Below are positions 3 to 64,000 of a DNA stretch of 64,000 nt, one piece after another; within the stretch, counting starts at the first letter, position 1; the number at the start of each line of letters is the position of its first letter. A model generated the notes under the pieces. It did not search any database. It was not told where the DNA came from and worked only from the letters and a program-made list of their open reading frames with translations. Location of the stretch: positions 159,647 through 223,646 of the IMG/VR virus record IMGVR_UViG_3300042326_002445. The stretch is one strand, 5' to 3'. Made by a program: the position numbers and the translations under genes.

Positions 3-347
3 TCTAAAATAGACAGCCAGGCTGATTTCAGGACTGCACTATCTATCAGTTCTGCAATTGGAGACTTTTATCTTCGTTCACCATCATGCATAGATATTGT
101 AGAACTGAGAGAAAAATTTAGACACATTTACGAGCAGTACTTGCTTGACAAAAGTGGAATGGTGTGTAAGATACACGATACCTACTTGGCACGAAACGTG
201 TTTAGCGGTACCGTACAAGACATGAAAAAATCTCTCCCTGTCTATTCTGCTGCTTGGTCAAATTATCTGGAAGAAGAAATTTTCTTGAAGGATAAGCCTA
301 AGAAAAACAGTATCAATATTTTAGATGAAGAGATGGAAATTTTCTGA
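3..347 (+). CDS. hypothetical protein, 5'-partial
   Basis: Frame is open from base 3 to the TGA at 345-347; track ORF 141..347 is its 3' part. Confidence 0.6.
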   Translation, partial: SKIDSQADFRTALSISSAIGDFYLRSPSCIDIVELREKFRHIYEQYLLDKSGMVCKIHDTYLARNVFSGTVQDMKKSLPVYSAAWSNYLEEEIFLKDKPKKNSINILDEEMEIF

Positions 348-2897: not shown

Positions 2898-3678
2898 GGA
2901 AAGAAAAAACAAATACGCATCTATGGTGTTTTCTCGTTCTGGGATTTGCAGCGATTTTGTCTCATGCTTCTCCAATAAAGAAAGCAATATTCTTTTGGCG
3001 TGCAGTGGTGGCCCAGATAGCGCTGCTATGATGGGAATTTCGAGAGTTTTACTTAATAGAGGCCTTGTTAAAAAGGTTGAGGTCGTTCATGTAAACCACA
3101 ACCTTAGAGAAGAGGCTTTGAATGATGCTGAGATGTGCGAGTCTCAAGCAGACATGTTTGATTTGCCATTTTTTTACTATGATATTTATCCTGGGCTTTT
3201 TGAAAAAAACACATATGAAGCTGGTAGAGAATTAAGATACCAGATCCTTCAGCACCATGCCCTCAAACATCATAGCGATGTGATCATGACGGCGCATCAT
3301 GCAGACGACATTGCCGAAACCGTTATGATGCATTTGGCAAGAGGATGTGGCATCAACGGTCTTTGTGGTGTCAGAGAAAGAAACTCTTCATTTGGACATG
3401 TTGATGTTGTAAGACCACTACTTAAGGTCAGAAAGAAAAAATTAGAAGAATTGTGCAATAAGGCTAATGTCCCTTATTGTATTGATAAATCTAACTTCAA
3501 TACAGAAAAGTCAAGAGCATATGTTAGGCACTCTGTAATTCCAGTTCTTGAAAAATTAAACCCAGCTTTTGTTGAACATGTTGTTAAAACAGCAATGTTC
3601 ATGCAAGACATTGTCGAGAAAGAATCATATGGGAAAAACAATAGAACCAAAAAGCATACTTCCAGTATTGACGGCTAA
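2866..3678 (+). CDS. tilS: tRNA(Ile)-lysidine synthetase (alternative start 2890)
   Basis: SGGPDS PP-loop, HVNHNLR, TAHHADDIAET, LARG, VVRPLL, DKSN, RAYVRH motifs; lacks the long C-terminal domains. Confidence 0.9.
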   Translation: MDGRMVYVMLKERKNKYASMVFSRSGICSDFVSCFSNKESNILLACSGGPDSAAMMGISRVLLNRGLVKKVEVVHVNHNLREEALNDAEMCESQADMFDLPFFYYDIYPGLFEKNTYEAGRELRYQILQHHALKHHSDVIMTAHHADDIAETVMMHLARGCGINGLCGVRERNSSFGHVDVVRPLLKVRKKKLEELCNKANVPYCIDKSNFNTEKSRAYVRHSVIPVLEKLNPAFVEHVVKTAMFMQDIVEKESYGKNNRTKKHTSSIDG

Positions 3679-3691
3679 TCAGGAGCAGATT

Positions 3692-4741
3692 ATGCATAAT
3701 AAATTTGAGCCAGATGTAAAACTTGATTTTTGTGATGTACTAATTTTGCCAAAATCTACTTCTGTAAGTAGCAGAAAAGAAGTCAATCTTGAAGTTCCAT
3801 TGAACTTCAGAAAAGCCGGTTTTTCTTTACCATGCGTTCCTGTGTGTGCATCCAATATGGACGGAGTGGGAACCATTTCGATGGGCAACAAGTTGGCATC
3901 ATACAAAATGATAACAACTTTAACAAAGTATACAACAGCTGGCGTTTTTGAGAAAGAAGACTATAAAAAATCAGATTACGTTTTTGGAACGTTTGGGTTA
4001 GATGATTACAGCAAATCTCTTATCCTCAACGAAAATATAGAAAATTACTTTTCTACTATTTGCCTTGATGTCGCAAATGGTTATATGGGCAAATTTTTAG
4101 ATTTTGTTAGTCTCGTTAGGGAGCGTTGGCCGCACATTGGTATACTCGCTGGCAATGTTGTCACCCCAGAGGGAGTTATCGATACCGCTCGTGCTGGTGC
4201 TGACTTTGTCAAAGTTGGCATAGGAAGTGGCTCAGTGTGCACAACACGGCGCGTTGCTGGCATAGGTTATCCTCAACTTTCAGCTCTTTTAGATTGTCGG
4301 ATTGCTGCTGAGGAAAGTGAATGCGGCATAGTTAGTGACGGCGGATGTGTTCATCCAGGGGACGTGTCTAAGGCTTTTGCCGCTGGCGCTGAGATCGTTC
4401 TGCTTGGTGGGATGCTCGCTGGTCATGACGAGGGCGCAGACGATGCAGTGGTCATTGACGATGGAGAAAAGAGAAGATTTATTTTCTCAGGATCTTCTTC
4501 TTCACGTGCTTTAAAAAAGATAGGAAATAATTCTAAGTACAGAACTTCGGAAGGAAGAGTTGTGCTTATGGAAGCTAAGGGTTCAGTTGAAGAAACTGTA
4601 AATCACATTTTGGGAGGCTTGCGTTCAACTTGTTCTTACACAAACTGTTTTGATCTTAAAGATTTGTATATGAATTCGAAATTCATTCGTGTCAATAGAC
4701 AACTTAATGAGTACTTCGAACATCACACAATAGGTGTTTAA
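3692..4741 (+). CDS. guaC: GMP reductase
   Basis: [46 protein letters not shown]; AGGAG RBS at 3681-3685 before ATG 3692. Confidence 0.92.
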
Positions 4742-8634: not shown

Positions 8635-8961
8635 ATGCGCAGGATTTTTAGTTTAATAAAAGATTTTGTAAAAACAGCATCAACGTCTCATTCTGTTTCT
8701 AGATTCCAATCAGCAGTTTTAAAATCTGGCAAATCTAGTTCCTCAAGAAAAAGCTTAGAGGTTAAGCTGCACTACAAGCGCTCATCTGAATTAGTGTCAG
8801 TAGACGTTGACGAATATACGAAGTCTGGGCATAAACATCGCAAGTATGAACTAGAAAACATATCGCCAAGCAATTTTTCTAGATTAGAAAAAATGATATC
8901 AAAAGGCCAATGGGGAATGTTTTTTGCGGTAGTTAACAAACACAGGGTTAAAGAAGACTAA
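8635..8961 (+). CDS. hypothetical protein
   Basis: 108 aa ORF; N-terminal FVKTAS. Confidence 0.7.
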   Translation: MRRIFSLIKDFVKTASTSHSVSRFQSAVLKSGKSSSSRKSLEVKLHYKRSSELVSVDVDEYTKSGHKHRKYELENISPSNFSRLEKMISKGQWGMFFAVVNKHRVKED

Positions 8962-11468
8962 ATCTCAGCAAATGCATCTGGACTAGTTCCCCTTGACAAG
9001 TTTCTTATGCCGGAAAGATGCTTAATGGCGTCCCATTTTTCTTTTCTTATTCTTGCTAGCTGTTCTTTAGCATCAGTAGAAGTAGATTCTGCTGCTTTCT
9101 TTTCTGCTTCCGATAGTGTTTGAATCTTTTCAGCTATTTTCTTCTTTTCTTGTAGTAAGTTATAGAATTTTCTGTCTAGAGTGTTATCCGCAATCATATA
9201 TGTCACATTGATTGATTTTCTTGAGCTTATTCTATAAAATCTTCCAAGAGACTGGTCGTCATCGCTTGGAGACCAATCAAAGTCATTGACAATTACGTCT
9301 GTAAGTATATTCGGAAAGTCTAATCCAGTTCCGCCTGCATCTATGCTTATTACTATTGCCATATATTGTGAGGTAGGGTTTTTAAATTCGTTGATTAGAT
9401 TCTGTCTTTCTGTTCTGTTCTGTCCACCGTATATGGCTGCTACTTGCTTATTCTGTCCAGGATACATAGCATCTAAATCTAGCTTCAAAAGTCTTTGTAT
9501 CTCTTTTAAAGAATCTGCGTGAGCTGTAAATATACCAACTTTATTACCTCTTTCCATGATAGAAATTGCATAAGCCACAGTATTTGGTACTTTGCTCATT
9601 GCAATTTTCTCTCTTATCTTACTCATTTCTTGAGCAGATGGTCTTTCTCTATTCCTAACACCCTGCATGATTTCATCAATTTCGTCTGAAGAAAGAGAAA
9701 TAGGACTTTCATTTACAGTCATTTCTGGTATGTTTGGATTAACTTCTTTTTTACTTCTTCTTATATATATTCCCTGATCTGTTAATAAGTCTCTGATCAT
9801 ATCAGCTTTTTGCATTTTCTCTTCTTCATCATCTGAAGACTCAAACCTTCTTTTGAATTCTCCGTATTCCATGTTGCCTAGTCCATGATTTACTGCCTGT
9901 AGCTGATTAAGAAGATCTCTTGGCTTGTTTGCCACGATTGTTGCAGAAGCTCCCCATACAAACGGTATATATTTAGTAACTTCTTGAACGTTAAATGTTC
10001 TGTGACTGTTTCTATGCTTTAGGAAACCGTTCAGGTTTTTATCTTCTGGGTTCCCATTTTTAACCATGTGTATTTCGTCCAATATGCATACGGTAAATTT
10101 CTTTTGTTTTGCATAATTTATTAAAGTTTCCGTTACAATTTCTCTTAATGGTTTTTTTGATCCGTCTGGACTGGAGAAAAGTGAATCTTCTTCAAAAAGC
10201 TGATATGGTAACACAGTCCATCGTGATGGTGCTTGCCAATTTTCAGATATGTCAGCATCGCTAGCTCCAGTAATTTTTTGTATTTCTACTACAAGTTGTG
10301 GCACAACTGCATTTTTTGTTATAATCAAGCAGCCAGGTCCGCTTGTTTTCATTCTTATATCTGCTGCGACTATGCATTGAATCGTTTTTCCTACACCAAC
10401 CTCATCTCCTAAAAGTGCACTTTGTCTGGAGTAAAGAAACTGTATCCCTTTTACTTGAGCAGGAAAAAACTTTTTATCTTCTTCTGGGATATTCAAATTT
10501 CTAAAAAACATGTTCTCGTACTGAGATATTAAATCTGTAAATTCTTTATTTGTTTTAAATCCATCTAGCTGTCCATCTACTCTAGTCTTTTTGATCTTTT
10601 TGCTTCTAATCAATTCATCAATGAGAGCACCCATTGCAGCTGTATTAAAATCATTTTTCTCAAGCATTTTTTGTAAATTTTTTAATTCTCTGAAGTCGCA
10701 TCTTAAATAATATATTGTTCTCATACTTGTATTTATTTGCGCAACTTTGTATTGAGTATCTATGTTGTTTGCAGTGTCTGCTTTCTTGGGAAATAAAAAT
10801 GTTATAACATCATCCATTTGTTTTGAAACGACAGAAGGGTCTCTGCTCCCCTGATTGACGGTGATTTTTAATAACCAATTTGGATTATCCGAAATTTCTG
10901 CCAACACCATTGGATTAACGTAGCCTTCTTTATCTTCTGGTGAGCCATTAAGCACAGGAGTTAATGGAGATGTTTCAAATCTGCTTGCTGCAAGAGCTTC
11001 CACAAATTGTCTCATTAGATTTTTAGTAACACTAGATATAACATATGTTGTGTCGCCAACTGGAGCAACTTTATTTTGGAATATTCTTTTTACTATACTG
11101 TAAAATATGGCGCTAAATTTGTCAGTATTTGTTCTCCTGTCTTGTGTTTTTATAGTAAGATCGCCAAATTTATCAAAAGATACAACTTTTATCATAGTAT
11201 CTTCATTATTTCTTACAGATTGAGGCACGTCAAATACAGTTGTGTCATGAGCATTTATACTTAATTCTGTTAGTATGTTTTCTATTGCCATTTTATATTG
11301 AAAATTAGACTGCATTGTCTTTCTAGACCCAAAAGACATTGTCATAATGAGAGGTATCTTTGCAGACGAAGCTTTATGGGCAAATCTACAAAATTCATTA
11401 GGAGTAATACCTATAAGGGTTACAAAAAGATTTCCTAATCTGTCGATATTAAATGTGTAAGTGCTCAT
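8958..11468 (-). CDS. SNF2-family (SF2) helicase/ATPase with a long uncharacterised N-terminus
   Basis: GDEVGVGKT, DEIH, SAT, IDAGGTGLDF, QSLGRFYRIS motifs. Confidence 0.9.
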   Translation of the reverse strand: MSTYTFNIDRLGNLFVTLIGITPNEFCRFAHKASSAKIPLIMTMSFGSRKTMQSNFQYKMAIENILTELSINAHDTTVFDVPQSVRNNEDTMIKVVSFDKFGDLTIKTQDRRTNTDKFSAIFYSIVKRIFQNKVAPVGDTTYVISSVTKNLMRQFVEALAASRFETSPLTPVLNGSPEDKEGYVNPMVLAEISDNPNWLLKITVNQGSRDPSVVSKQMDDVITFLFPKKADTANNIDTQYKVAQINTSMRTIYYLRCDFRELKNLQKMLEKNDFNTAAMGALIDELIRSKKIKKTRVDGQLDGFKTNKEFTDLISQYENMFFRNLNIPEEDKKFFPAQVKGIQFLYSRQSALLGDEVGVGKTIQCIVAADIRMKTSGPGCLIITKNAVVPQLVVEIQKITGASDADISENWQAPSRWTVLPYQLFEEDSLFSSPDGSKKPLREIVTETLINYAKQKKFTVCILDEIHMVKNGNPEDKNLNGFLKHRNSHRTFNVQEVTKYIPFVWGASATIVANKPRDLLNQLQAVNHGLGNMEYGEFKRRFESSDDEEEKMQKADMIRDLLTDQGIYIRRSKKEVNPNIPEMTVNESPISLSSDEIDEIMQGVRNRERPSAQEMSKIREKIAMSKVPNTVAYAISIMERGNKVGIFTAHADSLKEIQRLLKLDLDAMYPGQNKQVAAIYGGQNRTERQNLINEFKNPTSQYMAIVISIDAGGTGLDFPNILTDVIVNDFDWSPSDDDQSLGRFYRISSRKSINVTYMIADNTLDRKFYNLLQEKKKIAEKIQTLSEAEKKAAESTSTDAKEQLARIRKEKWDAIKHLSGIRNLSRGTSPDAFAEI

Positions 11469-39978: not shown

Positions 39979-40760
39979 TTAAATATCTTCTCCACTATTT
40001 GATGTATACCGTCTATTGATTTAAAGTTTAAAGATTGAGCTATTTCTAGGTTCTTCAATACAGCATGCTTTCTGCTTTCGTATTCAGCTTCAAAGTTAAA
40101 TGAATTTTTTATTGGCATAAAGTCTTTTAGCCATATAATTCCAGATTTGTCAAATACATCAAAAACTTTTTTTGTTCCCCAATATATTGGAATAGTTCCT
40201 GTCAAAAAACAGTCTAATATTTTTTCTGTAAAATATGTATCCACACAGCTATTCTCCATAGCGACAGAAAATCTATAATCTTTAAGAGCATCTATCTTTG
40301 ATTCCACTGATCTCTCTCTTCCGTGACCAAAAAGATCAGCTATTGAAGACATTTCACCTGCAACTTCTTGCCTGTATTGATGTCCTTGGCACATCACTTT
40401 TGAAGATGCTATCATGCTGATATCCTTACTTTTTGGATATATTTTTTGGTCTATTAAATCTATCCAAGCTGGCACACACGGATGGATCTGAATAACATTA
40501 TTTTTTGTGATTAGTTTATTGCAATGAGTAATTACTGCATCGTAATTAACTTTTCTATGCTCTACTGCGTTGTATATATCTGGTTCTATTGCTCGTGGCT
40601 CTAAAAGCCATAGTGCTTTTTTGCATGGCTTATTAAAACTGTTTATTCTATTAACAGAAACTATCAGGTCCGCATTATCAATATCAGAGCTAATCCAATT
40701 ATGGTGCGAAAGAGCTTCAAGCTTGTAATCCCAGTCTATAAATACTTTGTATTTTTTCAT
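39975..40760 (-). CDS. GT10 fucosyltransferase-like
   Basis: YRFSVAMENS..TYFTEKILDCFLTGTIPIYWG. Confidence 0.8.
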   Translation of the reverse strand: MKKYKVFIDWDYKLEALSHHNWISSDIDNADLIVSVNRINSFNKPCKKALWLLEPRAIEPDIYNAVEHRKVNYDAVITHCNKLITKNNVIQIHPCVPAWIDLIDQKIYPKSKDISMIASSKVMCQGHQYRQEVAGEMSSIADLFGHGRERSVESKIDALKDYRFSVAMENSCVDTYFTEKILDCFLTGTIPIYWGTKKVFDVFDKSGIIWLKDFMPIKNSFNFEAEYESRKHAVLKNLEIAQSLNFKSIDGIHQIVEKIFK

Positions 40761-41371
40761 TTTAAAAAGTCATATTTTCTATGACCGCCCTCTATGTCTG
40801 AGTAGCCTTCTCTTTGCCAAGCAAGATGGTGACAAAATCCATAGCATGATATTCTTTTTTGTATTTTGTGCAAATGTACATCCGCTGGTAGGTTAAAGAT
40901 ATTGCTATCAGAAAATTGTTCCATTAAAACATTAACTGCATTTTGATTTATTGCATAGCAATGAGTGGTGAATGTCTTCCTAAGTTTGTGTACGTACTCA
41001 TTTATCTTTTTAGGCGGCTCATTGTGAGACCCCCCAAAGAAAAGTAAATTCCAATCTTCTGGCACATGTTTGTAGTATTGTGAAAAAAGATTTTTAAAGT
41101 TTGGATGAAATTCAATATCATCTTCAAGAACTAGTACTTTTTGCAAACTTTTATCATCAAACATTTTTTGATATATTTTTTTATGAGAAAGGCAGCAGCC
41201 TGCAGCTCCTTTCTTGAGCCCCTTAGTATCGGATATGGTATCGCCATCAATAGCTTCTATAAATTCAACGTTCAGTCCGTGTGTGCGGAATATTCTTTCG
41301 CATTCTGAACGACGATCTTTTCTTCTTTGCAAATTAATGCAGTATATTTTATTAAAATCTGATATGTGCAT
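40757..41371 (-). CDS. GT25 glycosyltransferase, paralog of 19398..20015
   Basis: DFNKIYCINLQRR, GAAGCCLSH, LEDD, TTHCYAI shared. Confidence 0.85.
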   Translation of the reverse strand: MHISDFNKIYCINLQRRKDRRSECERIFRTHGLNVEFIEAIDGDTISDTKGLKKGAAGCCLSHKKIYQKMFDDKSLQKVLVLEDDIEFHPNFKNLFSQYYKHVPEDWNLLFFGGSHNEPPKKINEYVHKLRKTFTTHCYAINQNAVNVLMEQFSDSNIFNLPADVHLHKIQKRISCYGFCHHLAWQREGYSDIEGGHRKYDFLK

Positions 41372-44336: not shown

Positions 44337-44999
44337 ATGGAAAATACAGTAACATTTACAACTACAGCGATGGCTAGACCGGAGATACTTGAACAAACAT
44401 ATTATAATTTTCAAATATGCTTGAATATAAACATGAAAGATTTTGATTTACGAATAAATGTTGACCCATTGCCAAAAATAAATAAAGTTGATGAAGTAGT
44501 AAATGTAGCAAAGAAATTCTTTAAAAATGTTGACTATAACATATCAAAAGATGCCAATTTTCCTAGCGCAATCAAGTGGTGTTGGATGGACTTGCACACT
44601 AAATACACTTTTCACTTGGAAGACGATTGGGAGTTAACAAGGGGTATACCGCTCTATGAATTAGTAAAAATGCTTGAGAGCAATAAAGATATTAATCAAG
44701 TTTTACTAAGACCGTATCTTGAAACACATAAAGTAAGTTTAGTTCCTGGATTAATAAGAAGTGATGTCGCAATGTATTTAAGTAGGCATATGTTGCTTAA
44801 TAAAAATCCAGAAAAACAAATTCATTCAAATGAGCATACAGGAAAAGACGGAGATCCTGGCTTTGACGCCAATAAAGTCATAGTATATCCAGAAGATGTG
44901 TGCCTAAGGGACATCGGAAGAGTTTGGATGAAATCTCAATCTGTAATCAGGCCTGGCCCAGACTTCGTAAAATGGGAAAAGAAAAAAGATATTTACTGA
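44337..44999 (+). CDS. GT2-like glycosyltransferase
   Basis: TAMARP, INVD, FHLEDDW. Confidence 0.6.
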   Translation: MENTVTFTTTAMARPEILEQTYYNFQICLNINMKDFDLRINVDPLPKINKVDEVVNVAKKFFKNVDYNISKDANFPSAIKWCWMDLHTKYTFHLEDDWELTRGIPLYELVKMLESNKDINQVLLRPYLETHKVSLVPGLIRSDVAMYLSRHMLLNKNPEKQIHSNEHTGKDGDPGFDANKVIVYPEDVCLRDIGRVWMKSQSVIRPGPDFVKWEKKKDIY

Positions 45000-46003
45000 G
45001 CCATTTCGGGTGTAGCTACATTTTCCTTATGACCAGAAAACTGAATATTGACAATATCAGTATTGTCTCTAATAACGTCATCTAAAAATCTCTGCATCTC
45101 ATAAAGACTTGAGAATTCAACAAGTTTATTTTCAAACTTTAGTTTAAAAGTTCCAACAGCTTGCAGTATATCGCATTTATTAATGACTAGATCTGTGCAT
45201 CCAGATATCTTAATTGACTCCATAAGCTTGTCAACGTTTAGCCAATTCACCATTCTTTTTCTTCCGGTAGTAGATCCAAATTCTTCTCCTATTGTGATTA
45301 TCTTATTTAAAGTTTCATCATCCCAAAGAGATTCTGGGAATAGGGGGTCAACTCCGCTTTTAGTGTCATAAATTTTAGCAACACCAATCAGTCTGCGTAT
45401 TTTTTGAGGAGAGAAGCCAAGCGAGCAAGCACCATATGGCATAGTGGTACTACTTGTGACAAACGGATAGCAGCCATGGTCTATGTCGAGCCAAACACTC
45501 TGTGCCCCTTCGCAAAGTACCTTTCCCTCTAATTTTCCATCCCATAAGTACTCGCTCGGAAATAAGTCTTTTGCCCTGATCCCCTTGCGAAGCATTTTAT
45601 CTGCATAGCATGGAGCAATTCCCTGTCCAGTTGTTCCCAATCCTTTTTTTAAGTTATTTACATCAAACTGAATGTGTTCTTCAGTTATAATATGCGCATT
45701 AGGAGATACTTTTACTAAAGAAGTGTCAAAACCAGATGCCTTTAAGTATTCAATTTCTTCAAAAAACTTTTTCACATTTACTACACAACCTGGGCCTATA
45801 ATGCACTTTTTACCTTTAAAAATACCAGAAGGTATCATGTGTGTTTTGTATTTTTTGTCATTTAAATATACTGTATGTCCAGCATTTGGCCCACCATTCC
45901 ATCTGCAAACATAGTCATACTTTTCAGCAAGTGCGTTTGCAATTTTTCCCTTACCTTCATCGCCCCAAGAAAGTCCGTAAATAACATCAACAAATTTGAT
46001 CAT
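44993..46003 (-). CDS. purA: adenylosuccinate synthetase, short form
   Basis: WGDEGKG, RWNGGPNAGHT, IPSG, GTTGQGIAPCY, EGAQ, PFVTSS, TTGR. Confidence 0.93.
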   Translation of the reverse strand: MIKFVDVIYGLSWGDEGKGKIANALAEKYDYVCRWNGGPNAGHTVYLNDKKYKTHMIPSGIFKGKKCIIGPGCVVNVKKFFEEIEYLKASGFDTSLVKVSPNAHIITEEHIQFDVNNLKKGLGTTGQGIAPCYADKMLRKGIRAKDLFPSEYLWDGKLEGKVLCEGAQSVWLDIDHGCYPFVTSSTTMPYGACSLGFSPQKIRRLIGVAKIYDTKSGVDPLFPESLWDDETLNKIITIGEEFGSTTGRKRMVNWLNVDKLMESIKISGCTDLVINKCDILQAVGTFKLKFENKLVEFSSLYEMQRFLDDVIRDNTDIVNIQFSGHKENVATPEMAQ

Positions 46004-50898: not shown

Positions 50899-51894
50899 AT
50901 GCAAAAAACAGCGATTATCACAGGCGTCAATGGTCAGGATGGATCTTACCTTTCAGAGCTACTGCTATCGAAAGGTTACAGAGTAATAGGGCTGAAGAGA
51001 AGAACTTCAACTATTAATACATCTAGAGTAGATCATTTGATGTCTCACCCAGATTTTATATTGCGTTATTATGACTTGCAAGATGGACCATGCATAACTC
51101 ACCTTCTTGGCTCATGTCATGTTGATGAACTTTACAATCTGGCTGCACAGTCTCATGTGGGGGTGTCTTTTGAAATTCCAGAATACACATCATACGGGAT
51201 ATGCCAAGGAACCTTAAAGATACTTGAGGCAATACGCGCATCAAGTCCTCATACAAAGTTCTACCAAGCATCTTCTTCTGAAATGTTTGGAGACAGTACT
51301 GATTATGATGACAATCAGGCTTTTAATGAGAATAGTAAAATGTTACCTGTATCCCCATATGCATGCTCAAAGCTGCATGCGCATCACATGACTCGTGTTT
51401 ACAGAAATGCATACGGTATGCATGCGTCTTCCGGCATACTGTTTAATCATGAAAGCCCTCGTCGTGGTGAAACTTTTGTAACACGCAAAATCACAATTGC
51501 TGCTGCAAAGATTAAGCTTGGCATGCAAAGAAAGTTGAGTCTAGGCAATCTTGATGCTAAAAGAGATTGGGGTCATGCAGCAGATTATGTTGAAGCCATG
51601 TGGCTTATGCTTCAGCACGATTTTGGCGATGACTACGTGATCGCTACGAATGAAACTTACACTGTACGTGACTTCTTGAAGGTAGTTTTTGATCACGCTG
51701 GACTAGGAAGCTATGAGCAATATGTAGTAATAGACCAAAGACTTTTCCGTCCAAATGAAGTTCCTTTCTTAAAAGGAAATCCCGCAAAGGCAAAGTCAGT
51801 TTTGGGATGGAAGCCGAAGTACAACATGGAATCGCTAGCAATCAGCATGTTTGATGAAGACATGAAAAATTTAACAGAAAAGGTTTTAAGATGA
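50899..51894 (+). CDS. gmd: GDP-mannose 4,6-dehydratase
   Basis: ITGVNGQDGSYL, YNLAAQSHV, YQASSSEMFG, SPYACSK, NHESPRRGETFVTRKI, LGNLDAKRDWGHA. Confidence 0.95.
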   Translation: MQKTAIITGVNGQDGSYLSELLLSKGYRVIGLKRRTSTINTSRVDHLMSHPDFILRYYDLQDGPCITHLLGSCHVDELYNLAAQSHVGVSFEIPEYTSYGICQGTLKILEAIRASSPHTKFYQASSSEMFGDSTDYDDNQAFNENSKMLPVSPYACSKLHAHHMTRVYRNAYGMHASSGILFNHESPRRGETFVTRKITIAAAKIKLGMQRKLSLGNLDAKRDWGHAADYVEAMWLMLQHDFGDDYVIATNETYTVRDFLKVVFDHAGLGSYEQYVVIDQRLFRPNEVPFLKGNPAKAKSVLGWKPKYNMESLAISMFDEDMKNLTEKVLR

Positions 51895-57657: not shown

Positions 57658-58243
57658 TCAAACATGGCTGATTGGTTGCACTCACTTTGGACATGAAGCC
57701 ATGTACGGCTTCAGGCGATTCAATGGAGAGAAAGTGCGCCCTTTTTCAAGCGCAGCAGAAGGCGATGCAAAGATGGTGGAGAACTGGAACTCTGCCGTTA
57801 AGCCAGGAGACAAGGTGTATGTGCTTGGCGATGTTGCGTTCAAGCCAAAAGACATGGAGATTCTTTCAACTCTTCATGGCTCTAAGGTTCTCATCAAGGG
57901 TAACCACGACACCATGGACCTGTCCGTCTACAGGAAGTATTTTTACGACATTCGTGCCACTCATCAACTTGCTGATGAAGTGCTGTCGCACATCCCACTG
58001 CACCCAGGGTCTCTTTACAGGCACCGGAGCAAGACAAACTGGGTTAACATCCACGCACATCTTCACGCAGAAGCGGTACTGGAGAACTATGATGGCTCCC
58101 CAGACGACATTATGAGACCACATGTTTCAGAGGACTTAAGATATTTCTCTGTATGTGTAGAGAGAATTGGCTATACTCCGATATCTCTTGAAGAAGTGCG
58201 AGACAGGATTAAAAAGAGAGGCATAGTTGAAAAGAAGAACTGA
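57650..58243 (+). CDS. calcineurin-like metallophosphoesterase
   Basis: GCTHFGH, LGDV, KGNHD, LSHIP, HAHLH. Confidence 0.85.
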   Translation: MSSQTWLIGCTHFGHEAMYGFRRFNGEKVRPFSSAAEGDAKMVENWNSAVKPGDKVYVLGDVAFKPKDMEILSTLHGSKVLIKGNHDTMDLSVYRKYFYDIRATHQLADEVLSHIPLHPGSLYRHRSKTNWVNIHAHLHAEAVLENYDGSPDDIMRPHVSEDLRYFSVCVERIGYTPISLEEVRDRIKKRGIVEKKN

Positions 58244-58532
58244 TAGTTCCGAGCGCATGCACCTCATGGAAACTGGTATCCGTGAGAGAATGGAACTTGA
58301 TCAAGGTTATTCATTTAACCAGTTGATGTTTGCTGCTTCGGAGCACATTCCAGAAGGCATCAATTCAACAGAACTGAGCAAAGTAATTGACGACATGATG
58401 GCTCGCAGCATCATTATTGCAACGAGCAAAGGTGGTAAGAGTCGTTTCTTACCGTTTTTTCACGAAGAAGCAACTTACTTCATCAATCCTTTTGGAGAAC
58501 TGATGAACAAAGCAAAGGAAGCAAATGGGTAA
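58227..58532 (+). CDS. winged-helix-like hypothetical protein
   Basis: Three helices plus beta hairpin pattern; ends TYFINPFGELMNKAK. Confidence 0.55.
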   Translation: MKRRTDSSERMHLMETGIRERMELDQGYSFNQLMFAASEHIPEGINSTELSKVIDDMMARSIIIATSKGGKSRFLPFFHEEATYFINPFGELMNKAKEANG

Positions 58533-58788
58533 TTCTTTGAGTCGTTTGGAAGAAGACATCATTTGTGCTATCTCTCAGACAAGTAAGATTGATTACGATA
58601 CGCTGCAGAGATGTTTAATGAAAAAGCACAAAAGTTTGCTCAAGAGAGAGTTTGAGTACTCTGTCAACAACCTTGTCAGAGAAAATTACGTTGAAAAAAC
58701 ATGTGTAAGAGATGCTCTGGGCAAGGTGTCATGCATTGATTTTTCTCTCACGCCTTTTTACGATCTGCTGAGAGCGGCAAAAAACTGA
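58525..58788 (+). CDS. winged-helix-like hypothetical protein
   Basis: VNNLVRENYVEK...FSLTPFYDLLRAAK. Confidence 0.55.
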   Translation: MGNSLSRLEEDIICAISQTSKIDYDTLQRCLMKKHKSLLKREFEYSVNNLVRENYVEKTCVRDALGKVSCIDFSLTPFYDLLRAAKN

Positions 58789-58975
58789 AGTTTGCGGTCA
58801 CTCTGCCACTGGTCGGGATACTGATAGATAAGTATGCACCACGACCTGTTCATTTGGTTTTTTGTTATCGGACTCCCATCTGCAATTGCATTCTTGGGAT
58901 ACGCATACGCCAATGAAGTCTGGCCGTTTGATCCCAAAGTTCACTACAGCAACGATTGCTTGAGAAAGAGCAGCA

Positions 58976-59125
58976 ATGTCTACTCCAAAAGAAAAATCTG
59001 AGTACATCACTCTGTCGATTCCAGTTTCTGCCATCAAGTGCATTGTTCTTGCTGGCTTCACGGCATGGGGAGTTTGGATTCTCTTCCAGATGGTGAAAAT
59101 CATCCCCACGATCCCTTCGAAATAA
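58976..59125 (+). CDS. small membrane protein (not in ORF track)
   Basis: 49 aa MSTPKEKSEY...IVLAGFTAWGVWILFQMV. Confidence 0.55.
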   Translation: MSTPKEKSEYITLSIPVSAIKCIVLAGFTAWGVWILFQMVKIIPTIPSK

Positions 59126-59138
59126 AGGGGATTTTTCC

Positions 59139-59438
59139 GTGAATAAATCCAGTCCTTCAAGACTAGAGATTCAGGAAATGGCGATTGTTTTTTTGCGCAA
59201 AGGCAAATTGACCCTTGGCGAGATGTACGGTCTTTTTGAGGCTTATTACCGCACAAGTCACACCTCAAGAAGCAGTGAGTATTTTGCGGGAAGAATTATC
59301 AATGGTCTTAGTGCACTAGAAAAAAAGGGTGTTATTTTAGAAAGTCGCGCAGACAACCCGCATAATCCAACCTATGTCATCAACCCGATGTGGGAGATTT
59401 TAGACAAGGCTCGCACCGAAGCAGGCATCAAATCATGA
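59139..59438 (+). CDS. winged-helix-like hypothetical protein
   Basis: GLSALEKKGVI...TYVINPMWEILDKAR. Confidence 0.55.
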   Translation: MNKSSPSRLEIQEMAIVFLRKGKLTLGEMYGLFEAYYRTSHTSRSSEYFAGRIINGLSALEKKGVILESRADNPHNPTYVINPMWEILDKARTEAGIKS

Positions 59439-59864: not shown

Positions 59865-60374
59865 ATGGATAGCGATTCACGATCAGAAAAAGAGCAAATT
59901 GATTCTTTGGTCAAAGCGCTTTCCGAAAATGGAAAAGACGGCAAATCTATTGATGATTGTTTGCAAGAAGAAAAAGAAAACTTCAAGCAGAGTGCGGAAG
60001 ACTTTTGGAACAGACTTTCTAACGATGATCGTTTAAGGGCGTTCTATGAAGTCTGCAAGAGAATCCATGAAGGAGACCTTGTGCACCGTGGCTCTTACAG
60101 ATACGTTCTGTATCAGATATTTGGATTTGGTCCAGATGCGTACTTTGCAGGATTAGAGTGTGGATACATCGACATCCACAACTCCATCATGCCACCTGAA
60201 GACATAAAAAAAACAGAGAGCATTATTTCTGCCATGATGGAGGCAAGAGATGAGGCAAGACGCGAAGTGTGTGAGTTGAAGTCTCACAACTTTGAGGGAA
60301 AGATCTCTCCTCAAAGTTATGCAGCAATGAGGAAGTGGGACTGCTTCCCTGACGAATCACAGGGCCAGAAATAG
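59865..60374 (+). CDS. hypothetical protein with an RDEARREV...WDCF module
   Basis: 169 aa. Confidence 0.75.
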   Translation: MDSDSRSEKEQIDSLVKALSENGKDGKSIDDCLQEEKENFKQSAEDFWNRLSNDDRLRAFYEVCKRIHEGDLVHRGSYRYVLYQIFGFGPDAYFAGLECGYIDIHNSIMPPEDIKKTESIISAMMEARDEARREVCELKSHNFEGKISPQSYAAMRKWDCFPDESQGQK

Positions 60375-60470
60375 CGTCCTGTAATCGGTTCAGTACTTTT
60401 TTGAAATCTTGCCGTTTTCTGTGCTCTGAATCTTCAGATGTTGGACCTGTATCTATACGAGGCCACAACC

Positions 60471-60683
60471 ATGAATACTTGCAAAGCAATCGAACAGTTC
60501 ATGAAAGAAAACGGCTTTTTCATTTCAAGAAAAGGCAAACACTTAGTTTGGAAGAATCGTGATGGAGCAACTGTGGTGACAAGCAAAACTCCATCAGACC
60601 ACAGAACATTGAAAAACATAGAGTCATTAGTCAGAAAAATTAGACGGACAAACAGTTTGGCTAGTTTAAAAAATGCGGCATAA
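60471..60683 (+). CDS. HicA-like (dsRBD-fold) protein
   Basis: FMKENGF...KGKHLVWK...VVTSKTPSD, the HicA G-x-H pattern. Confidence 0.6.
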   Translation: MNTCKAIEQFMKENGFFISRKGKHLVWKNRDGATVVTSKTPSDHRTLKNIESLVRKIRRTNSLASLKNAA

Positions 60684-60724: not shown

Positions 60725-60752
60725 TTGACAGCCCCCAACGGTTGCGTAAACT
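60725..60752 (+). promoter_or_regulatory. sigma70-like promoter, predicted leaderless transcript
   Basis: TTGACA 60725-60730, 16 nt, TAAACT 60747-60752; ATG 60759 at +7. Confidence 0.75.
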
Positions 60753-60758
60753 ACCTCT

Positions 60759-61049
60759 ATGACACTTGCCACTTCTACGAAAAAGCCATCGAAGCACCAC
60801 TACTTCATCCATTACAAGAAGGGTGACTACATCTCCACCAGAGATCTGCTGGAGGAGCGTTACGAAAGCGCCGTGTACGGATCAGGCATGTTCATCCAGA
60901 CGGGAGCATTCGACATCCACCTGTACTGCACTTCACAGAAGTTCAGAAACATCAAGCGGCTTCTCCATCGGAATGTCGTGAACAAGCTTGGGTCGCCCAT
61001 TAGTTTCAACTACACCCGCCAGACTGCTGCCGAATACAACAAGAGATAA
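60759..61049 (+). CDS. hypothetical protein, paralog of 63465..63734
   Basis: KKP.K.HY...Y..GDY...GSG....FD.H.YCT shared. Confidence 0.75.
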   Translation: MTLATSTKKPSKHHYFIHYKKGDYISTRDLLEERYESAVYGSGMFIQTGAFDIHLYCTSQKFRNIKRLLHRNVVNKLGSPISFNYTRQTAAEYNKR

Positions 61050-61070: not shown

Positions 61071-61901
61071 ATGCCTGCCAAAAAGAAAAACAAGATCAAT
61101 CCCATTCTTGCAAAGTTCTTTAAAGATGCTGTTCACAGCGACAACTTCTTAAAATTGATAGCCAAAAATTTTGCAGAGATTGATTTCTCCTATTACTCCA
61201 ACAAGCTGGATGAGCCTTTTGTGTTTTGCCTTCTGGACCTTGTGAACTGCAAGGACAAGAAGATGAAGGAGATCGCATACAATGTTGCTCAGCAATCGCT
61301 GTCGAAGCGGTGCATCGACAAGGCTCTTGCGTCCAAAGATTGCCGTCTCATGTGTATGGCTATCGAAAATGCTCGTCTGACAAAGGAGCAGGAACTCATT
61401 TGCATGACCTGCGAGTATGAGGATGTGCGGGGAACTGCTGCAGACAGTTGTCACGCGAGCAAGACGGTTTTGGGGCTTGCGCTTCAGGACGCTTCCCGGA
61501 GGGTCCGCATGGAGGCAGTAAGTAACTCCGAGATGCTCAATTACAGTGATTTGGCTGTTCAGGCTCTTAGCAGTCGTTCTCCAGATATTCGCACATCCAT
61601 CACAAAATACGCCTGTTGGAGCAAGACGGTGTGCGGTGCTGATGTTCACAAGGCTGCATTGGTCAGCAAATGGACCGATGTCCGCATTGAGATCGCTGAA
61701 AGTTCCGTGTACCTCACGGAGGGTCAGTGGCATACTCTTCTGGAAGACCCCAACAAAAATGTTCGCAAGGCAGCGCGTAAGCACCCGAACGCAAAGAAGT
61801 GGAAAGATCCTCTTCGCGCTCTTCTCCGCAAGGCTCGTGCTGCGCGCAAGGCGGGCAAAGTGGTCATCGAATCCCCCGCAGCAGAACCCATTGCCGACTG
61901 A
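61071..61901 (+). CDS. HEAT/LRV-like repeat protein
   Basis: Recurrent LxDxxxxVRxxA units (ALQDASRRVRMEA, LLEDPNKNVRKAA). Confidence 0.75.
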   Translation: MPAKKKNKINPILAKFFKDAVHSDNFLKLIAKNFAEIDFSYYSNKLDEPFVFCLLDLVNCKDKKMKEIAYNVAQQSLSKRCIDKALASKDCRLMCMAIENARLTKEQELICMTCEYEDVRGTAADSCHASKTVLGLALQDASRRVRMEAVSNSEMLNYSDLAVQALSSRSPDIRTSITKYACWSKTVCGADVHKAALVSKWTDVRIEIAESSVYLTEGQWHTLLEDPNKNVRKAARKHPNAKKWKDPLRALLRKARAARKAGKVVIESPAAEPIAD

Positions 61902-61909
61902 GGAGTCCC

Positions 61910-62131
61910 ATGGATTTCGACATGAACAGACCGACATCTTCCACCCGTGCAGATTTCATTCGTGATCTGCGAGAAATTGCTGCCGAAGCAAAAAATGGCG
62001 CAGATTTGGAAGACTGCCGTAAGCGAGCAGAAGAAGTTCTATGGAAATTGGCGAGGCTTGGCATCTACCCACATCCAACACACACCGAGTGGTTTCAGCC
62101 AATCTCCAAAGCATTGGGCTGGGATGATTAA
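61910..62131 (+). CDS. hypothetical protein
   Basis: GAGGAG RBS before ATG 61910. Confidence 0.7.
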   Translation: MDFDMNRPTSSTRADFIRDLREIAAEAKNGADLEDCRKRAEEVLWKLARLGIYPHPTHTEWFQPISKALGWDD

Positions 62132-62169
62132 ACATAAATATTCTTTTGAAGTGAAAGGAATCACGCAAG

Positions 62170-62547
62170 ATGGCACTTGAACCAAAGCCACAGGAAATAA
62201 GGCTGAGACACATCAACGAGTCACTTTCTGAGGCAATCAGATATTTTGATCCAGACAGATGGTATGAACATCGTCTTCTGATGCTTCAAATGAAGGACAT
62301 GATTGACGAACTCGTGTCTCAACGCGACGATGCGAGGGAGCAGGAAGAGCGCTTTTCCGATGATGCCCTGCGCCTGATGGAGGAGCGCAATCAGGCGCTG
62401 AAGGAGCGTGACGAGGCAAGACGAGAAGTTGCCCAGTCGCAAGCGCAGTACAACTCCCTCATGTTTGACAATTCTCGTTTACACGATCCTCATGCCATTG
62501 CTGAGTCAAGGGGCTGGGACTGCTTCAAGAAAGATGACGGTAAGTGA
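62170..62547 (+). CDS. coiled-coil protein with an RDEARREV...GWDCF module
   Basis: 125 aa; shares its module with 59865..60374. Confidence 0.75.
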   Translation: MALEPKPQEIRLRHINESLSEAIRYFDPDRWYEHRLLMLQMKDMIDELVSQRDDAREQEERFSDDALRLMEERNQALKERDEARREVAQSQAQYNSLMFDNSRLHDPHAIAESRGWDCFKKDDGK

Positions 62548-62687
62548 AGATAAGTCCCCAAACTCTTGATCTATTGGATTTGTTGTGGCTCAACTTCATG
62601 ATTCTGACCTTTATTGCTTTTCTGTGTGTCGGCATTGCCATCGGCATGACAGAGATTGAGATACACGAAATGAGGAATTTCAAGTGA
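62544..62687 (+). CDS. small membrane protein (not in ORF track)
   Basis: GTGA coupling at both ends; hydrophobic FMILTFIAFLCVGIAIG. Confidence 0.55.
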   Translation: MKISPQTLDLLDLLWLNFMILTFIAFLCVGIAIGMTEIEIHEMRNFK

Positions 62688-63058
62688 GCAAGAAGTATCG
62701 CAAGGCGACAAATGACATTGTGGAAGGCGCGTTTACTGCTTCTCACTCCCGTAGCGAACGAATGCTGTCAAAGTGCATGAGAGATCCGCATCCCTTGATC
62801 CGTTTTGCGGCGGCAGGAAATCCAAACGCCACGGCAAAAATACTCCGATTGGCAATGGCAGATCCGTGTCCAGAAGTTCGTGGAGCAGCCGCTTCCAATG
62901 GAAGGATCAGCCGTTCTCTGTGGAATGAAGCTGCCATTGACTCCAGCAAGCTTGTTCGCTCCGAAGCAGCAGCAAACGCCAAGGCAATCAGGAGTGGATG
63001 GAATGATCCACTTCACTCCTTGCTCTACAGTGCTAAAAAGAAAAAATTGAAGAAGTAA
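62684..63058 (+). CDS. LRV/HEAT repeat protein
   Basis: DPHPLIRFAAAGNPNAT, DPCPEVRGAAASN, DSSKLVRSEAAAN. Confidence 0.8.
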   Translation: MSKKYRKATNDIVEGAFTASHSRSERMLSKCMRDPHPLIRFAAAGNPNATAKILRLAMADPCPEVRGAAASNGRISRSLWNEAAIDSSKLVRSEAAANAKAIRSGWNDPLHSLLYSAKKKKLKK

Positions 63059-63101
63059 TCTTTATCTTTTATGTAATCTATGTCAAAGTAGCGTACTATA
63101 C

Positions 63102-63130
63102 TTGACGGCGCTAGCCTCTTGTGCTACCAT
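63102..63130 (+). promoter_or_regulatory. sigma70-like promoter, near-leaderless
   Basis: TTGACG 63102-63107, 17 nt, TACCAT 63125-63130; ATG at 63140. Confidence 0.7.
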
Positions 63131-63139
63131 ACGATGAGC

Positions 63140-63445
63140 ATGGCTAAGAACAGTACTCCTGAAGAACTCCTGAAAGACTTAGGCAGTAAGAATGGTTATG
63201 TCCGCTGTGCTGCTGCGGAGCATCCCAATGCTACTCCCGAAGTCCTGCTGAAGGCAATCGAAGACAGGTCTGTTCGTGTGCGCCGCCATGCTGCCCGGAA
63301 TCCCAATGCCACTCCCGAAGTACTCCTGAAGGCAATTGGAGACAAGGATTGGTCCGTTTGCAGCGCTGCTCAAGAGAGTTTACAAAACGATCCCCTTCTT
63401 CAACTCCAAGTCTCTGCTCTGAAGGCACAGAAAGCCGCCTCTTAA
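63140..63445 (+). CDS. 26-aa leucine-rich-variant (LRV) repeat protein
   Basis: PNATPEVLLKAI repeated at a 78-nt period. Confidence 0.85.
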   Translation: MAKNSTPEELLKDLGSKNGYVRCAAAEHPNATPEVLLKAIEDRSVRVRRHAARNPNATPEVLLKAIGDKDWSVCSAAQESLQNDPLLQLQVSALKAQKAAS

Positions 63446-63464
63446 GAAAATTAAGGAAAACAAA

Positions 63465-63734
63465 ATGACTAATAAAATCAAGACCAAGAAGCCGATCAAG
63501 TACCACTACATTTTCTTTTACAGCCGTGGAGATTATTTTGATATTTCTCATGCACTTGAAGATTTTTACCAGCCATATTTTTGCGGGAGTGGCTGTGGAG
63601 GGAGTGGATTTGATGTCCACTTTTACTGCACCGCCAAGGAATACAAGCGCATTGTAGCGTTTGCCCGTCGCAATTATGGCAAGATCAAGAGCGTCATTCG
63701 TTATACCGATGAAGCCTTTAATGGAGATAGCTGA
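63465..63734 (+). CDS. hypothetical protein, paralog of 60759..61049
   Basis: AAGGA RBS; shared HY/GDY/GSG/FD.H.YCT motifs. Confidence 0.75.
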   Translation: MTNKIKTKKPIKYHYIFFYSRGDYFDISHALEDFYQPYFCGSGCGGSGFDVHFYCTAKEYKRIVAFARRNYGKIKSVIRYTDEAFNGDS

Positions 63735-63735
63735 C

Positions 63736-64000
63736 ATGGCTACTTATACTCCTGAAGAACTCCTGAAAGACCTAGACAGCAATGATCGCGTTGTCCGCTA
63801 TTGTGCTGCCGGGAATCCCAATGCCTCTCCCGAAGTCCTGTTGAAGGCAATGGAAGACGATTATAAGGAAGTTCGCTGGAAGGCTGCCGATAATCCTAAT
63901 GCCACTCCCGAAGTCCTGATGAAGGCAATGAAAGACAAGGAATACAGTGTCCGCTATGCTGCTGCCGGGAATCCCAATGCCACTCCCGAAATTTTGCTTA
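63736..64000 (+). CDS. 26-aa LRV repeat protein, 3'-partial (not in ORF track)
   Basis: MATYTPEELLKDL...NPNASPEVLLKAM...NPNATPEVLMKAM...NPNATPEILL; frame open to the window end. Confidence 0.85.
   Translation, partial: MATYTPEELLKDLDSNDRVVRYCAAGNPNASPEVLLKAMEDDYKEVRWKAADNPNATPEVLMKAMKDKEYSVRYAAAGNPNATPEILL

What the first reader, a model, noticed from the sequence alone, without database searches (positions are those of the whole stretch)
62684..64000. Expanding family of 26-aa LRV repeat proteins with a constant scaffold and hypervariable face
Seen: the NPNATPEVLLKA scaffold is near-identical at DNA level across two genes, while the positions around VR vary in every unit (GYVRCAAAEH, VRVRRHAARN, RVVRYCAAGN, KEVRWKAADN, YSVRYAAAGN). 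Known: HEAT-like solenoids bind partners through such variable positions. Inference: a recombination-driven repertoire of binders, possibly anti-defence proteins.
Basis: partly seen in the sequence, partly recalled or inferred. Interest (0 to 1): 0.62.

Follow-up and report, generated by a model that had tools for sequence, protein, structure and literature searches.

The report
Phage family of LRV/HEAT-like binder proteins
The end of this window carries part of a six-gene cluster from a very large lake-water phage that encodes small helical-repeat (LRV/HEAT-like) proteins with a near-constant 26-residue scaffold and five variable surface positions per repeat, which look like natural counterparts of the engineered "alphaRep" binder proteins; their targets are unknown.

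Summary
Window 61071-64000 holds four genes for 26-residue LRV/HEAT-like repeat proteins. Related contigs show that the gene cut by the window end is 178 aa and that two more family genes follow. The host genome is a partial (about 55%) huge phage from lake-water metagenomes.

- **Variable positions:** Across 55 distinct units from five related phages, positions 3, 4, 7, 8 and 11 carry 12-17 different residues. The rest of the unit is almost invariant.
- **DNA-level scaffold:** Scaffold codons are shared far beyond codon bias (0.73 against 0.36 expected).
- **Replacement rate:** Amino-acid replacement at the five positions (0.49) exceeds the synonymous rate of the conserved codons between them (0.21).
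- **Fold:** A pLDDT-97 model is an alpha-solenoid. Its best sequence and fold matches are artificial alphaRep binders, whose randomised binding positions are the same five, and 1LRV.
- **Shuffling between lineages:** Gene number, unit number and cap combinations differ between related phages, and exact repeats reach 58 nt.
- **No variation within the phage:** The genes are identical in four other contigs and in contigs of four runs from 2020-2023. No reverse transcriptase was found.

The result is a new phage-borne member of a known repeat class. A binder role is likely. An anti-defence role is untested.

The parts
60725..60752 (+). sigma-70-like promoter match (TTGACA-16-TAAACT) a few bases upstream of the small 96-aa gene
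   Evidence: L003 7586-7613; window = L003 + 53139. This is a consensus match only.
60759..61049 (+). s96, a small basic protein and paralogue of s89, directly upstream of the 276-aa repeat gene
   Evidence: 39% identity to s89, E 2e-17. No Pfam or PHROG family.
61071..61901 (+). g276, a divergent LRV/HEAT-like family member with degenerate units and the family's C-terminal (K/N)DPL..LL motif
   Evidence: Family profile E 2.5e-10 at G001 40691-40903, equal to window 61320-61532. Weak Pfam HEAT hit. Unit anchors shown.
62684..63058 (+). g124, a divergent member with three 26-aa units; basic, pI 10.4
   Evidence: Pfam HEAT 29.6 bits. Profile E 9e-19. Units at residues 39/65/91. pI.
63102..63130 (+). 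promoter-like site TTGACG-17-TACCAT, ending 9 nt before the ATG of g108
   Evidence: L003 9963-9991. This is a consensus match only.
63140..63445 (+). g108 (101 aa from the ATG that homologues use): N-cap, two canonical units, C-cap
   Evidence: Pfam LRV 32.9 bits and HEAT 30.2 bits. Homologues start at the same motif.
63465..63734 (+). s89, a conserved small phage protein with a ferredoxin-like fold that sits next to LRV genes in six of the eight loci checked
   Evidence: No specific PDB match.
63736..64000 (+). first 88 codons of a 178-aa LRV gene (N-cap, five units, C-cap in the full gene), cut by the contig end; GGAG lies 9 nt upstream of the ATG
   Evidence: The full gene is L003:10597-11133. 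AF2 model pLDDT 97.
63971..64000 (+). first 30 nt of a 58-nt exact direct repeat (units 3 and 5 of the 178-aa gene); this is where the contig breaks
   Evidence: L003 10832/10988. Logan contigs also end at L003 10861.

Best explanation
These are small cytoplasmic alpha-solenoid proteins of the LRV/HEAT-like class. Each is built as an N-cap (half a unit), 2-5 internal 26-residue helix-turn-helix units (up to 11 in relatives), and a conserved C-cap.

Shown:
- The buried residues of each unit (V5, A9, A10, the NPNATPE turn and helix B) are almost constant.
- Five positions of helix A (3, 4, 7, 8, 11, spaced i, i+1, i+4, i+5, i+8) vary freely and are rich in Tyr, Trp, Ser, Gly, Arg and acidic residues.
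- The family grows and changes by duplication of genes and units, and by exchange of units and caps across the DNA-identical scaffold segments.
- Amino-acid replacement at the five positions is faster than the local synonymous rate after duplication. Between orthologues the residues are then largely conserved.

Inferred:
- The variable residues line up along the solenoid into one continuous recognition surface.
- Each paralogue binds its own protein target through that surface, as engineered alphaRep proteins do.
- The cluster is therefore a fixed, lineage-specific set of binders, not a population-level variable repertoire.
- The targets are most likely host proteins handled early in infection.
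For: - **Repeat class:** Pfam LRV and HEAT score above their cut-offs.
- **Fold:** The AF2 model has pLDDT 97 and pTM 0.89, with helix A at unit positions 3-11 and helix B at 17-23.
- **Closest solved structures:** The best sequence matches are alphaRep binders (E 5.6e-13). The best fold matches are alphaRep (TM 0.67-0.70) and 1LRV.
- **Same five positions as alphaRep:** The HMMER alignment puts our positions 3, 4, 7, 8 and 11 on alphaRep positions 18, 19, 22, 23 and 26. Those are the randomised positions of the concave face that contacts targets in crystal complexes. The preference for small residues at alphaRep position 23 recurs at our position 8, where Ala plus Gly make up 44%.
- **Variability:** Entropy is 3.15-3.5 bits at the five positions and below 1 bit at most scaffold positions, over 55 units.
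- **Codon sharing:** 0.73 observed against 0.36 expected.
- **Replacement rate:** pN at the hypervariable positions is 0.49 against pS 0.21 at the interleaved conserved codons; bootstrap difference 0.28 (0.17-0.37).
- **Functional genes:** Orthologue dN/dS is 0.2-0.3 for the scaffold and 0.25-0.9 for the hypervariable positions.
- **Mosaicism and copy number:** Related phages carry 1-6 genes with 2-11 units, and exact repeats reach 58 nt.
- **Localisation:** No signal peptide or extra domain is evident in the sequences.
Against: - No target is known and no binding has been shown.
- No RNA run holds the locus, so expression is unproven.
Surface exposure therefore rests on helix periodicity and on equivalence to alphaRep, not on a computed accessibility.
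- The pN/pS comparison uses non-independent pairs of short, recombining units. Saturation at the variable codons makes the ratio approximate.
- A variable surface on a constant scaffold is common to most repeat-protein families, so it does not by itself prove specific binding.
Confidence: 0.55

Rival explanations
1. The proteins are specifically anti-defence or host-takeover inhibitors, each neutralising a host immunity protein.
For: They are small, lie in a block of short accessory genes carrying sigma-70-like promoter matches, and their number varies between related phages. Their variable residues diverge faster than synonymous sites after duplication. Both features are typical of conflict genes.
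Against: There are no informative hits in PADLOC or PHROGs. I found no paper linking phage HEAT or LRV proteins to anti-defence. The variable residues are conserved between orthologues and invariant over years in the lake. The host is unknown.
Confidence: 0.15
2. They are adaptors or chaperones for the phage's own proteins, for example assembly or folding of its giant proteins, and not host-directed.
For: The genome encodes many giant ORFs of up to 5,596 aa. A single-copy relative, P0038, heads an operon that reaches a T4 gp13-like neck gene in another phage. Conservation of the variable residues between orthologues fits co-evolving internal partners.
Against: The cluster lies far from the giant ORFs, among small accessory genes. 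Gene and unit number change freely between close relatives, which is unusual for core assembly factors.
Confidence: 0.15
3. They are code-like nucleic-acid binders (TALE, PUF or PPR style), with one unit reading one base through the variable residues.
For: The repeats are near-identical modular units with a few specificity positions. g124 and g276 are basic, with pI 10.4 and 9.2.
Against: The canonical members are acidic to neutral, with pI 5.3-8.7. Five positions with 12-17 residue types each is far more diversity than a four-letter code needs. The closest structures are protein binders.
Confidence: 0.05
4. The variable positions are produced by a programmed mechanism such as a diversity-generating retroelement or phase-variable shuffling.
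For: Variation is concentrated at a few codons within otherwise identical DNA.
Against: No reverse transcriptase was found in the 223-kb contig, although the genome is only about 55% complete. There were no variants, indels or joints in contigs of four runs, and 0-1 mismatches in four IMG/VR contigs. Orthologues keep their variable residues.
Confidence: 0.02
5. The apparent family is an assembly artefact or a set of decaying pseudogenes.
For: Repeats break short-read assemblies here. One relative, L044, carries a 76-nt out-of-frame deletion between scaffold repeats.
Against: The same architecture was assembled independently in four other samples, and with the same 178-aa layout in a diverged phage. 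All frames are open. Scaffold dN/dS is 0.2-0.3. The model has pLDDT 97.
Confidence: 0.03

Closest known systems
alphaRep artificial binders and the natural thermostable HEAT-like repeat family they were designed from (PDB 3LTJ, 4JW2, 6FSQ and others; PMC3754942)
   Same: Both are helix-turn-helix alpha-solenoids with an N-cap and a C-cap and a variable number of units. The ...xxVRxxAAx... helix motif is the same, and the same five variable positions occur (alphaRep 18, 19, 22, 23, 26 = here 3, 4, 7, 8, 11). Small residues are favoured at the fourth of these. These are the best sequence and fold matches.
   Different: The unit here is 26 residues, not 31: the ALGxIG-DERA turn is replaced by an NPNATPE turn, so the sixth alphaRep variable position has no counterpart. 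These proteins are natural, phage-encoded and in a multigene cluster. Binding has not been shown. TM is only about 0.7 (rmsd 3.5-3.8 A), so the curvature probably differs.
Leucine-rich repeat variant (LRV), Pfam PF01816; Azotobacter vinelandii protein 1LRV
   Same: The Pfam model of 26 positions is matched almost end to end, above its cut-off. 1LRV is a fold match (E 2.7e-5, TM 0.67).
   Different: There is no Fe-S cluster domain. The model has two DSSP alpha-helices per unit, whereas 1LRV is described (from my own knowledge) as alternating alpha- and 3-10 helices in 24-residue repeats. The rmsd of 5.7 A is worse than for alphaRep.
Expanded repeat-protein gene families of large viruses (ankyrin-repeat families of poxviruses, giant viruses and some phages). 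This is an analogy from general knowledge and was not tested here.
   Same: A large virus carries tandem paralogues of a small repeat scaffold, with lineage-specific copy number and variable surfaces.
   Different: The fold and repeat class are different. Those families often carry an extra effector motif such as an F-box; none is seen here.
TAL effector repeats, lamprey VLRs and DGR variable proteins (systems with a constant scaffold and concentrated variability)
   Same: DNA-level near-identity of repeat scaffolds with variation confined to a few codons, and unit-number change by recombination.
   Different: There is no evidence of nucleic-acid reading, somatic assembly or retro-mutagenesis. 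The genes are stable within the population.

Membership tests
Pfam LRV (PF01816) | Whole-protein score above the curated cut-off of 21.6 bits | tested here: met
   g108 scores 32.9 bits and the 88-aa fragment of the cut gene 29.0 bits. g124 (11.1 bits) and the 366-aa gene (20.3 bits) fall below it, and g276 has no LRV hit at E up to 1; all three are recognised only by the family's own profile.
Pfam HEAT (PF02985) | Whole-protein score above the curated cut-off of 23.5 bits | tested here: met
   29.6, 30.2 and 31.6 bits for g124, g108 and the cut gene. g276 scores 18.8 bits and does not meet it.
LRV fold (1LRV) | Right-handed solenoid of short two-helix repeats that superposes on 1LRV | tested here: met
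   Foldseek E 2.7e-5, TMq 0.67, 175 columns. The model has 13 helices with a strict 26-residue period.
LRV protein of A. vinelandii type | N-terminal 4Fe-4S cluster domain | tested here: not met
   The proteins consist only of caps and units. There is no Cys-rich N-terminal domain.
alphaRep-like HEAT repeats | 31-residue unit with variable positions 18, 19, 22, 23, 26 and 30 on the concave face | tested here: inconclusive
   Five of the six positions correspond and are the most variable here. The unit is 26 residues, and position 30 has no counterpart.
alphaRep-like HEAT repeats | Binds protein targets through the variable face | not testable with these tools
   No target is known. The one complex job, against the neighbouring small protein, gave no verdict.
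DGR variable protein | Nearby reverse transcriptase and template repeat, with adenine-directed variation in the population | tested here: not met
   No RVT_1 in the 223 kb. No variants in four runs or four contigs. The genome is incomplete, so an RT elsewhere is not excluded.
Known anti-phage defence or anti-defence families | A match to a curated model | tested here: not met
   PADLOC gave only a generic HEAT-ARM stretch (E 6.6e-7 to part of a 1,972-position model). PHROGs gave only unknown-function families at E >= 4e-4.

The most novel reading that the evidence does not exclude
Huge freshwater phages keep a natural equivalent of a synthetic binder library. Capped 26-residue modules have DNA-identical scaffolds that act as recombination handles. 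This lets units, caps and whole genes be duplicated and swapped between paralogues, while positive selection retunes five surface residues per unit. Each phage lineage thereby gains its own panel of inhibitors of host proteins, possibly defence proteins. The panel is then held stable.
Probability: 0.2. Interest if true: 0.7.

Novelty: new member of a known kind. Interest (0 to 1): 0.45.

Why it matters
If these proteins are binders, the cluster is a compact, naturally evolved panel of specific protein binders. It is built on a scaffold shorter than any engineered alpha-solenoid library, and its specificity positions match those that protein engineers chose independently. That gives phage biologists a tractable set of candidate host-takeover or anti-defence factors in uncultured megaphages. 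It gives protein engineers a 26-residue natural scaffold with a ready catalogue of tolerated surface residues. It is also a clean example of gene-family growth by unit shuffling in a phage genome. On its own, without targets, it remains an ordinary repeat-protein family in an unusual genome.

Tried and rejected
- **Complex prediction:** The 178-aa LRV protein was tested against the neighbouring s89 protein. The result was no verdict (score 0.01), which is evidence neither way.
- **s89 function:** No Pfam, PHROG, NCBIfam or PADLOC family matched. The Atlas gave only viral hypothetical clusters below 0.9. The fold is a generic ferredoxin-like beta-alpha-beta-beta-alpha-beta with no PDB match at E <= 0.001.
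- **s89 as an obligate partner:** It is adjacent to LRV genes in L003, L007, L008, L043, L044 and L045, but not in L046 or L047. L007 has one s89 for five LRV genes. I make no binding claim.
- **DGR idea:** No reverse transcriptase was found.
- **Population shuffling:** None was seen. Only Logan contigs were available, at depth of about 5, with no raw reads.
- **RNA evidence:** No RNA run holds the locus.
- **Host inference:** The DNA polymerase has no close isolate relative. A pattern scan of GTDB genomes gave a single distant Acidimicrobiales hit at 27%. The scan relied on one peptide pattern, so absence from cells is weakly supported.
- **Isolated phages:** Only Moorella phage MTATph1 matched, at 33%.
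- **Literature:** No paper pairs LRV with phage, and none reports phage HEAT proteins as anti-defence.
- **Three small ORFs at 58227-59438:** I suspected they were paralogues. The one pair I compared (58525-58785 against 59139-59435) gave no alignment.
- **Phycobilisome-lyase reading:** CpcF and NblB hits were rejected, at 16-20 bits against cut-offs of 220-300.
- **Big representative protein search:** Not run. The family is not in doubt, and that library carries no names or context.

Full report
**Where the window lies.** The window is the last 64 kb of a 223,646-bp linear IMG/VR virus contig that CheckV rates about 55% complete. The contig is a phage. It encodes a DnaB-like helicase, a DNA polymerase, several helicases, and ORFs of up to 5,596 aa. 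G+C is about 0.33 over most of the contig and climbs to 0.47 in the last 5 kb. The same DNA is held by at least 24 lake-water metagenome runs dated 2020-2024.

**Check of the observation.**
- Pfam places them in LRV (32.9 and 29.0 bits, cut-off 21.6) and HEAT (about 30 bits, cut-off 23.5).
- Two more ORFs in the window, 62684-63058 and 61071-61901, are divergent members. A profile built from the family recognises them (E 9e-19 and 2.5e-10).
- The DNA alignment of the units shows a near-identical 3' two-thirds and a divergent 5' third.
- This is not codon bias. Same-residue scaffold positions use the same codon in 73% of unit pairs, against 36% expected from neighbouring genes. Codon choices are position-specific, for example the locally rare CCC for Pro.

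**Extending past the contig end.** Four other IMG/VR contigs carry the same phage with 0-1 mismatches over 10.8 kb and run on past the window end.
- They show that the cut gene is 178 aa: an N-cap, five units and a C-cap.
- It is followed by a Phage_L5_gp82-family gene, a 126-aa LRV gene and a 366-aa divergent LRV gene.
- All six family genes lie within about 5.3 kb. None lies elsewhere in the 83.9-kb or 223-kb contigs.
- The window ends 30 nt into a 58-nt exact repeat between units 3 and 5 of the 178-aa gene. Logan contigs break at the same base, so the contig end is a repeat-induced assembly break.

**Anatomy of the unit.** I collected 55 distinct units from the window phage and four related phages.
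- The consensus is xxXXVRXXAAXNPNATPEVLLKAIxD.
- Positions 3, 4, 7, 8 and 11 have 12-17 residue types each (3.15-3.5 bits).
- Most other positions are below 1 bit.
- The variable positions are rich in Tyr (12%), Glu, Gly, Ser, Asp, Ala and Arg, with Trp and Cys at about 4% each.

**Structure.** AlphaFold2 on the 178-aa protein gives pLDDT 97 and pTM 0.89, with thirteen helices.
- Helix A covers unit positions 3-11 and helix B covers 17-23.
- The five variable positions are spaced i, i+1, i+4, i+5, i+8, which is one face of helix A. V5, A9 and A10 lie on the other face.

**Closest solved structures.** By sequence, the nearest solved proteins are artificial alphaRep binders (E 5.6e-13). By fold, they are alphaRep (TM 0.67-0.70) and then 1LRV.
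- The residue-level alignment maps our five positions onto alphaRep positions 18, 19, 22, 23 and 26.
- Those positions were randomised in the alphaRep library because they vary in the natural template family. They form the concave face that contacts targets in crystal complexes (PMC3754942).
[quoted passage not shown] Here the equivalent position 8 is Ala or Gly in 44% of units.

**Selection.**
- Among the ten canonical units of the window phage, scaffold codons have pS 0.33 and pN 0.08, while the five variable codons have pN 0.68.
- I then took nearest-neighbour unit pairs chosen only on codons 12-26. The conserved codons interleaved with the variable ones (5, 6, 9, 10) have pS 0.21, not different from the distal scaffold at 0.17. 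The variable codons have pN 0.49.
- The bootstrap difference is 0.28 (95% interval 0.17-0.37). The variable half of the unit is therefore not simply older DNA; amino-acid replacement there has outrun the local silent rate.
- Caveats: the pairs share units, the units recombine, and the variable codons are near saturation.
- Between orthologues in related phages the picture is different. The variable positions have dN/dS of about 0.25-0.9 and are mostly unchanged, and the scaffold has 0.2-0.3. Each paralogue appears to keep its own surface once it is established.

**Recombination and copy number.**
- Related phages carry one to six family genes with two to eleven units each.
- The orthologue of the 178-aa gene in L008 has three units and a different cap type.
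- Two L007 genes share their last two units and cap at 95-97% DNA identity while their other units differ.
- Two adjacent L010 genes share an identical unit.
- N-cap and C-cap types combine freely.
- Exact repeats of 20-58 nt lie within and between genes. One 39-nt repeat spans the stop codon and 3' flank of two genes, which shows whole-gene duplication.
- In one pair of near-identical contigs, a 76-nt deletion lies exactly between two scaffold repeats. Because it is out of frame, it may be an assembly error.

**Stability within the population.** Contigs of four lake runs (2020-2023) laid on 5.7 kb spanning the cluster show no differing letters in the long, near-identical pieces listed, no indels and no joints. 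The only two other letters listed come from single low-depth contigs of run X22. The four IMG/VR contigs are identical in these genes. No reverse transcriptase is present in the 223 kb. The phage as a whole is clonal in these samples, so this rules out rapid programmed variation. It does not rule out diversification on longer time scales.

**Surroundings.**
- An 89-aa protein (63465-63734) and its 96-aa paralogue (60759-61049) each sit next to an LRV gene.
- s89 homologues are 60-70% identical across many freshwater contigs. They follow an LRV gene in six of the eight loci examined.
- Its model is a ferredoxin-like fold with no informative match.
- Promoter-like sites lie just upstream of s96 and of g108.
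- The wider neighbourhood is a block of short accessory genes that recurs in related contigs: a Metallophos phosphoesterase, two proteins ending in a shared ...WDCF motif, and a weak HicA-like ORF.

**Distribution.**
- Word-based protein searches found 18 and 37 relatives. All come from metagenome assemblies or runs (one cluster is also held by NCBI, without a name), mostly as single-member clusters, and are named at best 'HEAT repeat protein'.
- IMG/VR gave 23 loci. Of those I opened, some carry the repeats fused to a longer unrelated N-terminal region.
- INPHARED gave one weak hit.
- A pattern scan of GTDB genomes gave one distant hit.

**Verdict.**
- **Variable binding face:** the interpretation as solenoid binders with a variable face is well supported by homology and geometry, but binding is unproven.
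- **Recombination-driven repertoire:** true between lineages and not within the population.
- **Anti-defence role:** untested.
- **Classification:** a new phage-borne member of the known LRV/HEAT-like class. It resembles the natural families behind alphaRep and differs mainly in its 26-residue unit, its multigene cluster and its DNA-level scaffold identity.

The reads tool was given 5,701 letters.

Noticed in passing
window 1-64000; G001 (L003, L048, L049); L007, L008: The phage genome is compositionally two-part. G+C is about 0.31-0.39 over at least 215 kb. It then rises through 0.43-0.47 at 56-64 kb and stays at 0.47-0.66 for at least 40 kb beyond the window. Related phages show the same step, and several independent contigs cross it. 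I did not find the cause.
   Followed up: partly
G000:C1 371-152899 (upstream of the window): There is a run of giant ORFs: 3286, 1776, 2808, 1849, 5596, 2587, 3965, 1936, 3947 and 2671 aa, all on the + strand. The mid-sized ORFs between them that I scanned had no PHROG match.
   Followed up: no
window 11453-39202 and 50899-51894: A long block of back-to-back 200-340-aa ORFs, of which the few scanned are sugar-modification enzymes: a GT2 plus GT1 798-aa protein, a fucosyltransferase-like GT10, an NAD-dependent epimerase and a GDP-mannose 4,6-dehydratase.
   Followed up: partly
window 44993-46003 (-) and 3569-4741 (+): A short (336 aa) adenylosuccinate-synthetase-like protein scores below the NCBIfam cut-offs for both PurA (293 against 402) and PurZ (99 against 300). 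The window also holds an IMPDH/GMP-reductase-family gene. Whether the phage alters its purines is open.
   Followed up: partly
window 59865-60374 and 62170-62547; L043:4402-4674: Two paralogous proteins share a C-terminal ...RDEARREV...WDCF motif (E 3e-5). A third copy lies next to s89 in a related contig. Function is unknown.
   Followed up: partly
window 60438-60683 (+): An 81-aa ORF has a weak HicA-toxin-like match (E 3.7e-4, 21 bits, below the cut-off of 27). I looked for no partner antitoxin.
   Followed up: no
L003:11248-11685 (just beyond the window end): A Phage_L5_gp82-family gene (PF25735, E 5.5e-30) sits between two LRV genes. The only cellular hit of the LRV pattern scan was an Acidimicrobiales MAG. 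Both are faint hints of an actinobacterial connection.
   Followed up: no
window 63102-63140 and 60725-60759: The -10 hexamers of two promoter-like sites end only 9 and 6 nt before the start codons of g108 and s96, which would give leaderless or nearly leaderless mRNAs. These are consensus matches only.
   Followed up: no
L043:3308-3943 vs L044:2945-3503: Two contigs whose flanks are 98.7-100% identical upstream (about 96% downstream) differ by a 76-nt deletion between two scaffold repeats of an LRV gene, which truncates the gene in L044. It is either real unit loss with a frameshift or a repeat-induced assembly error.
   Followed up: partly
L003:13219-13278: A short tandem duplication with a 23-nt period (ACCCCCCGTATTTTAGAGTCTAG...) lies directly downstream of the 366-aa LRV gene.
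   Followed up: no
L038 (G005, complete 149-kb phage with terminal repeats), L039, L026: Other freshwater phages carry the same repeat type fused to an N-terminal region with no Pfam hit: about 250 residues in L038 and L039 (596-600 aa proteins, about 12 units), and 273 aa in L026. G005 has two such genes at separate loci.
   Followed up: partly
window 325-1278 (+) and 8958-11468 (-): An M43/reprolysin-like metallopeptidase and an 836-aa SNF2-family helicase.
   Followed up: no
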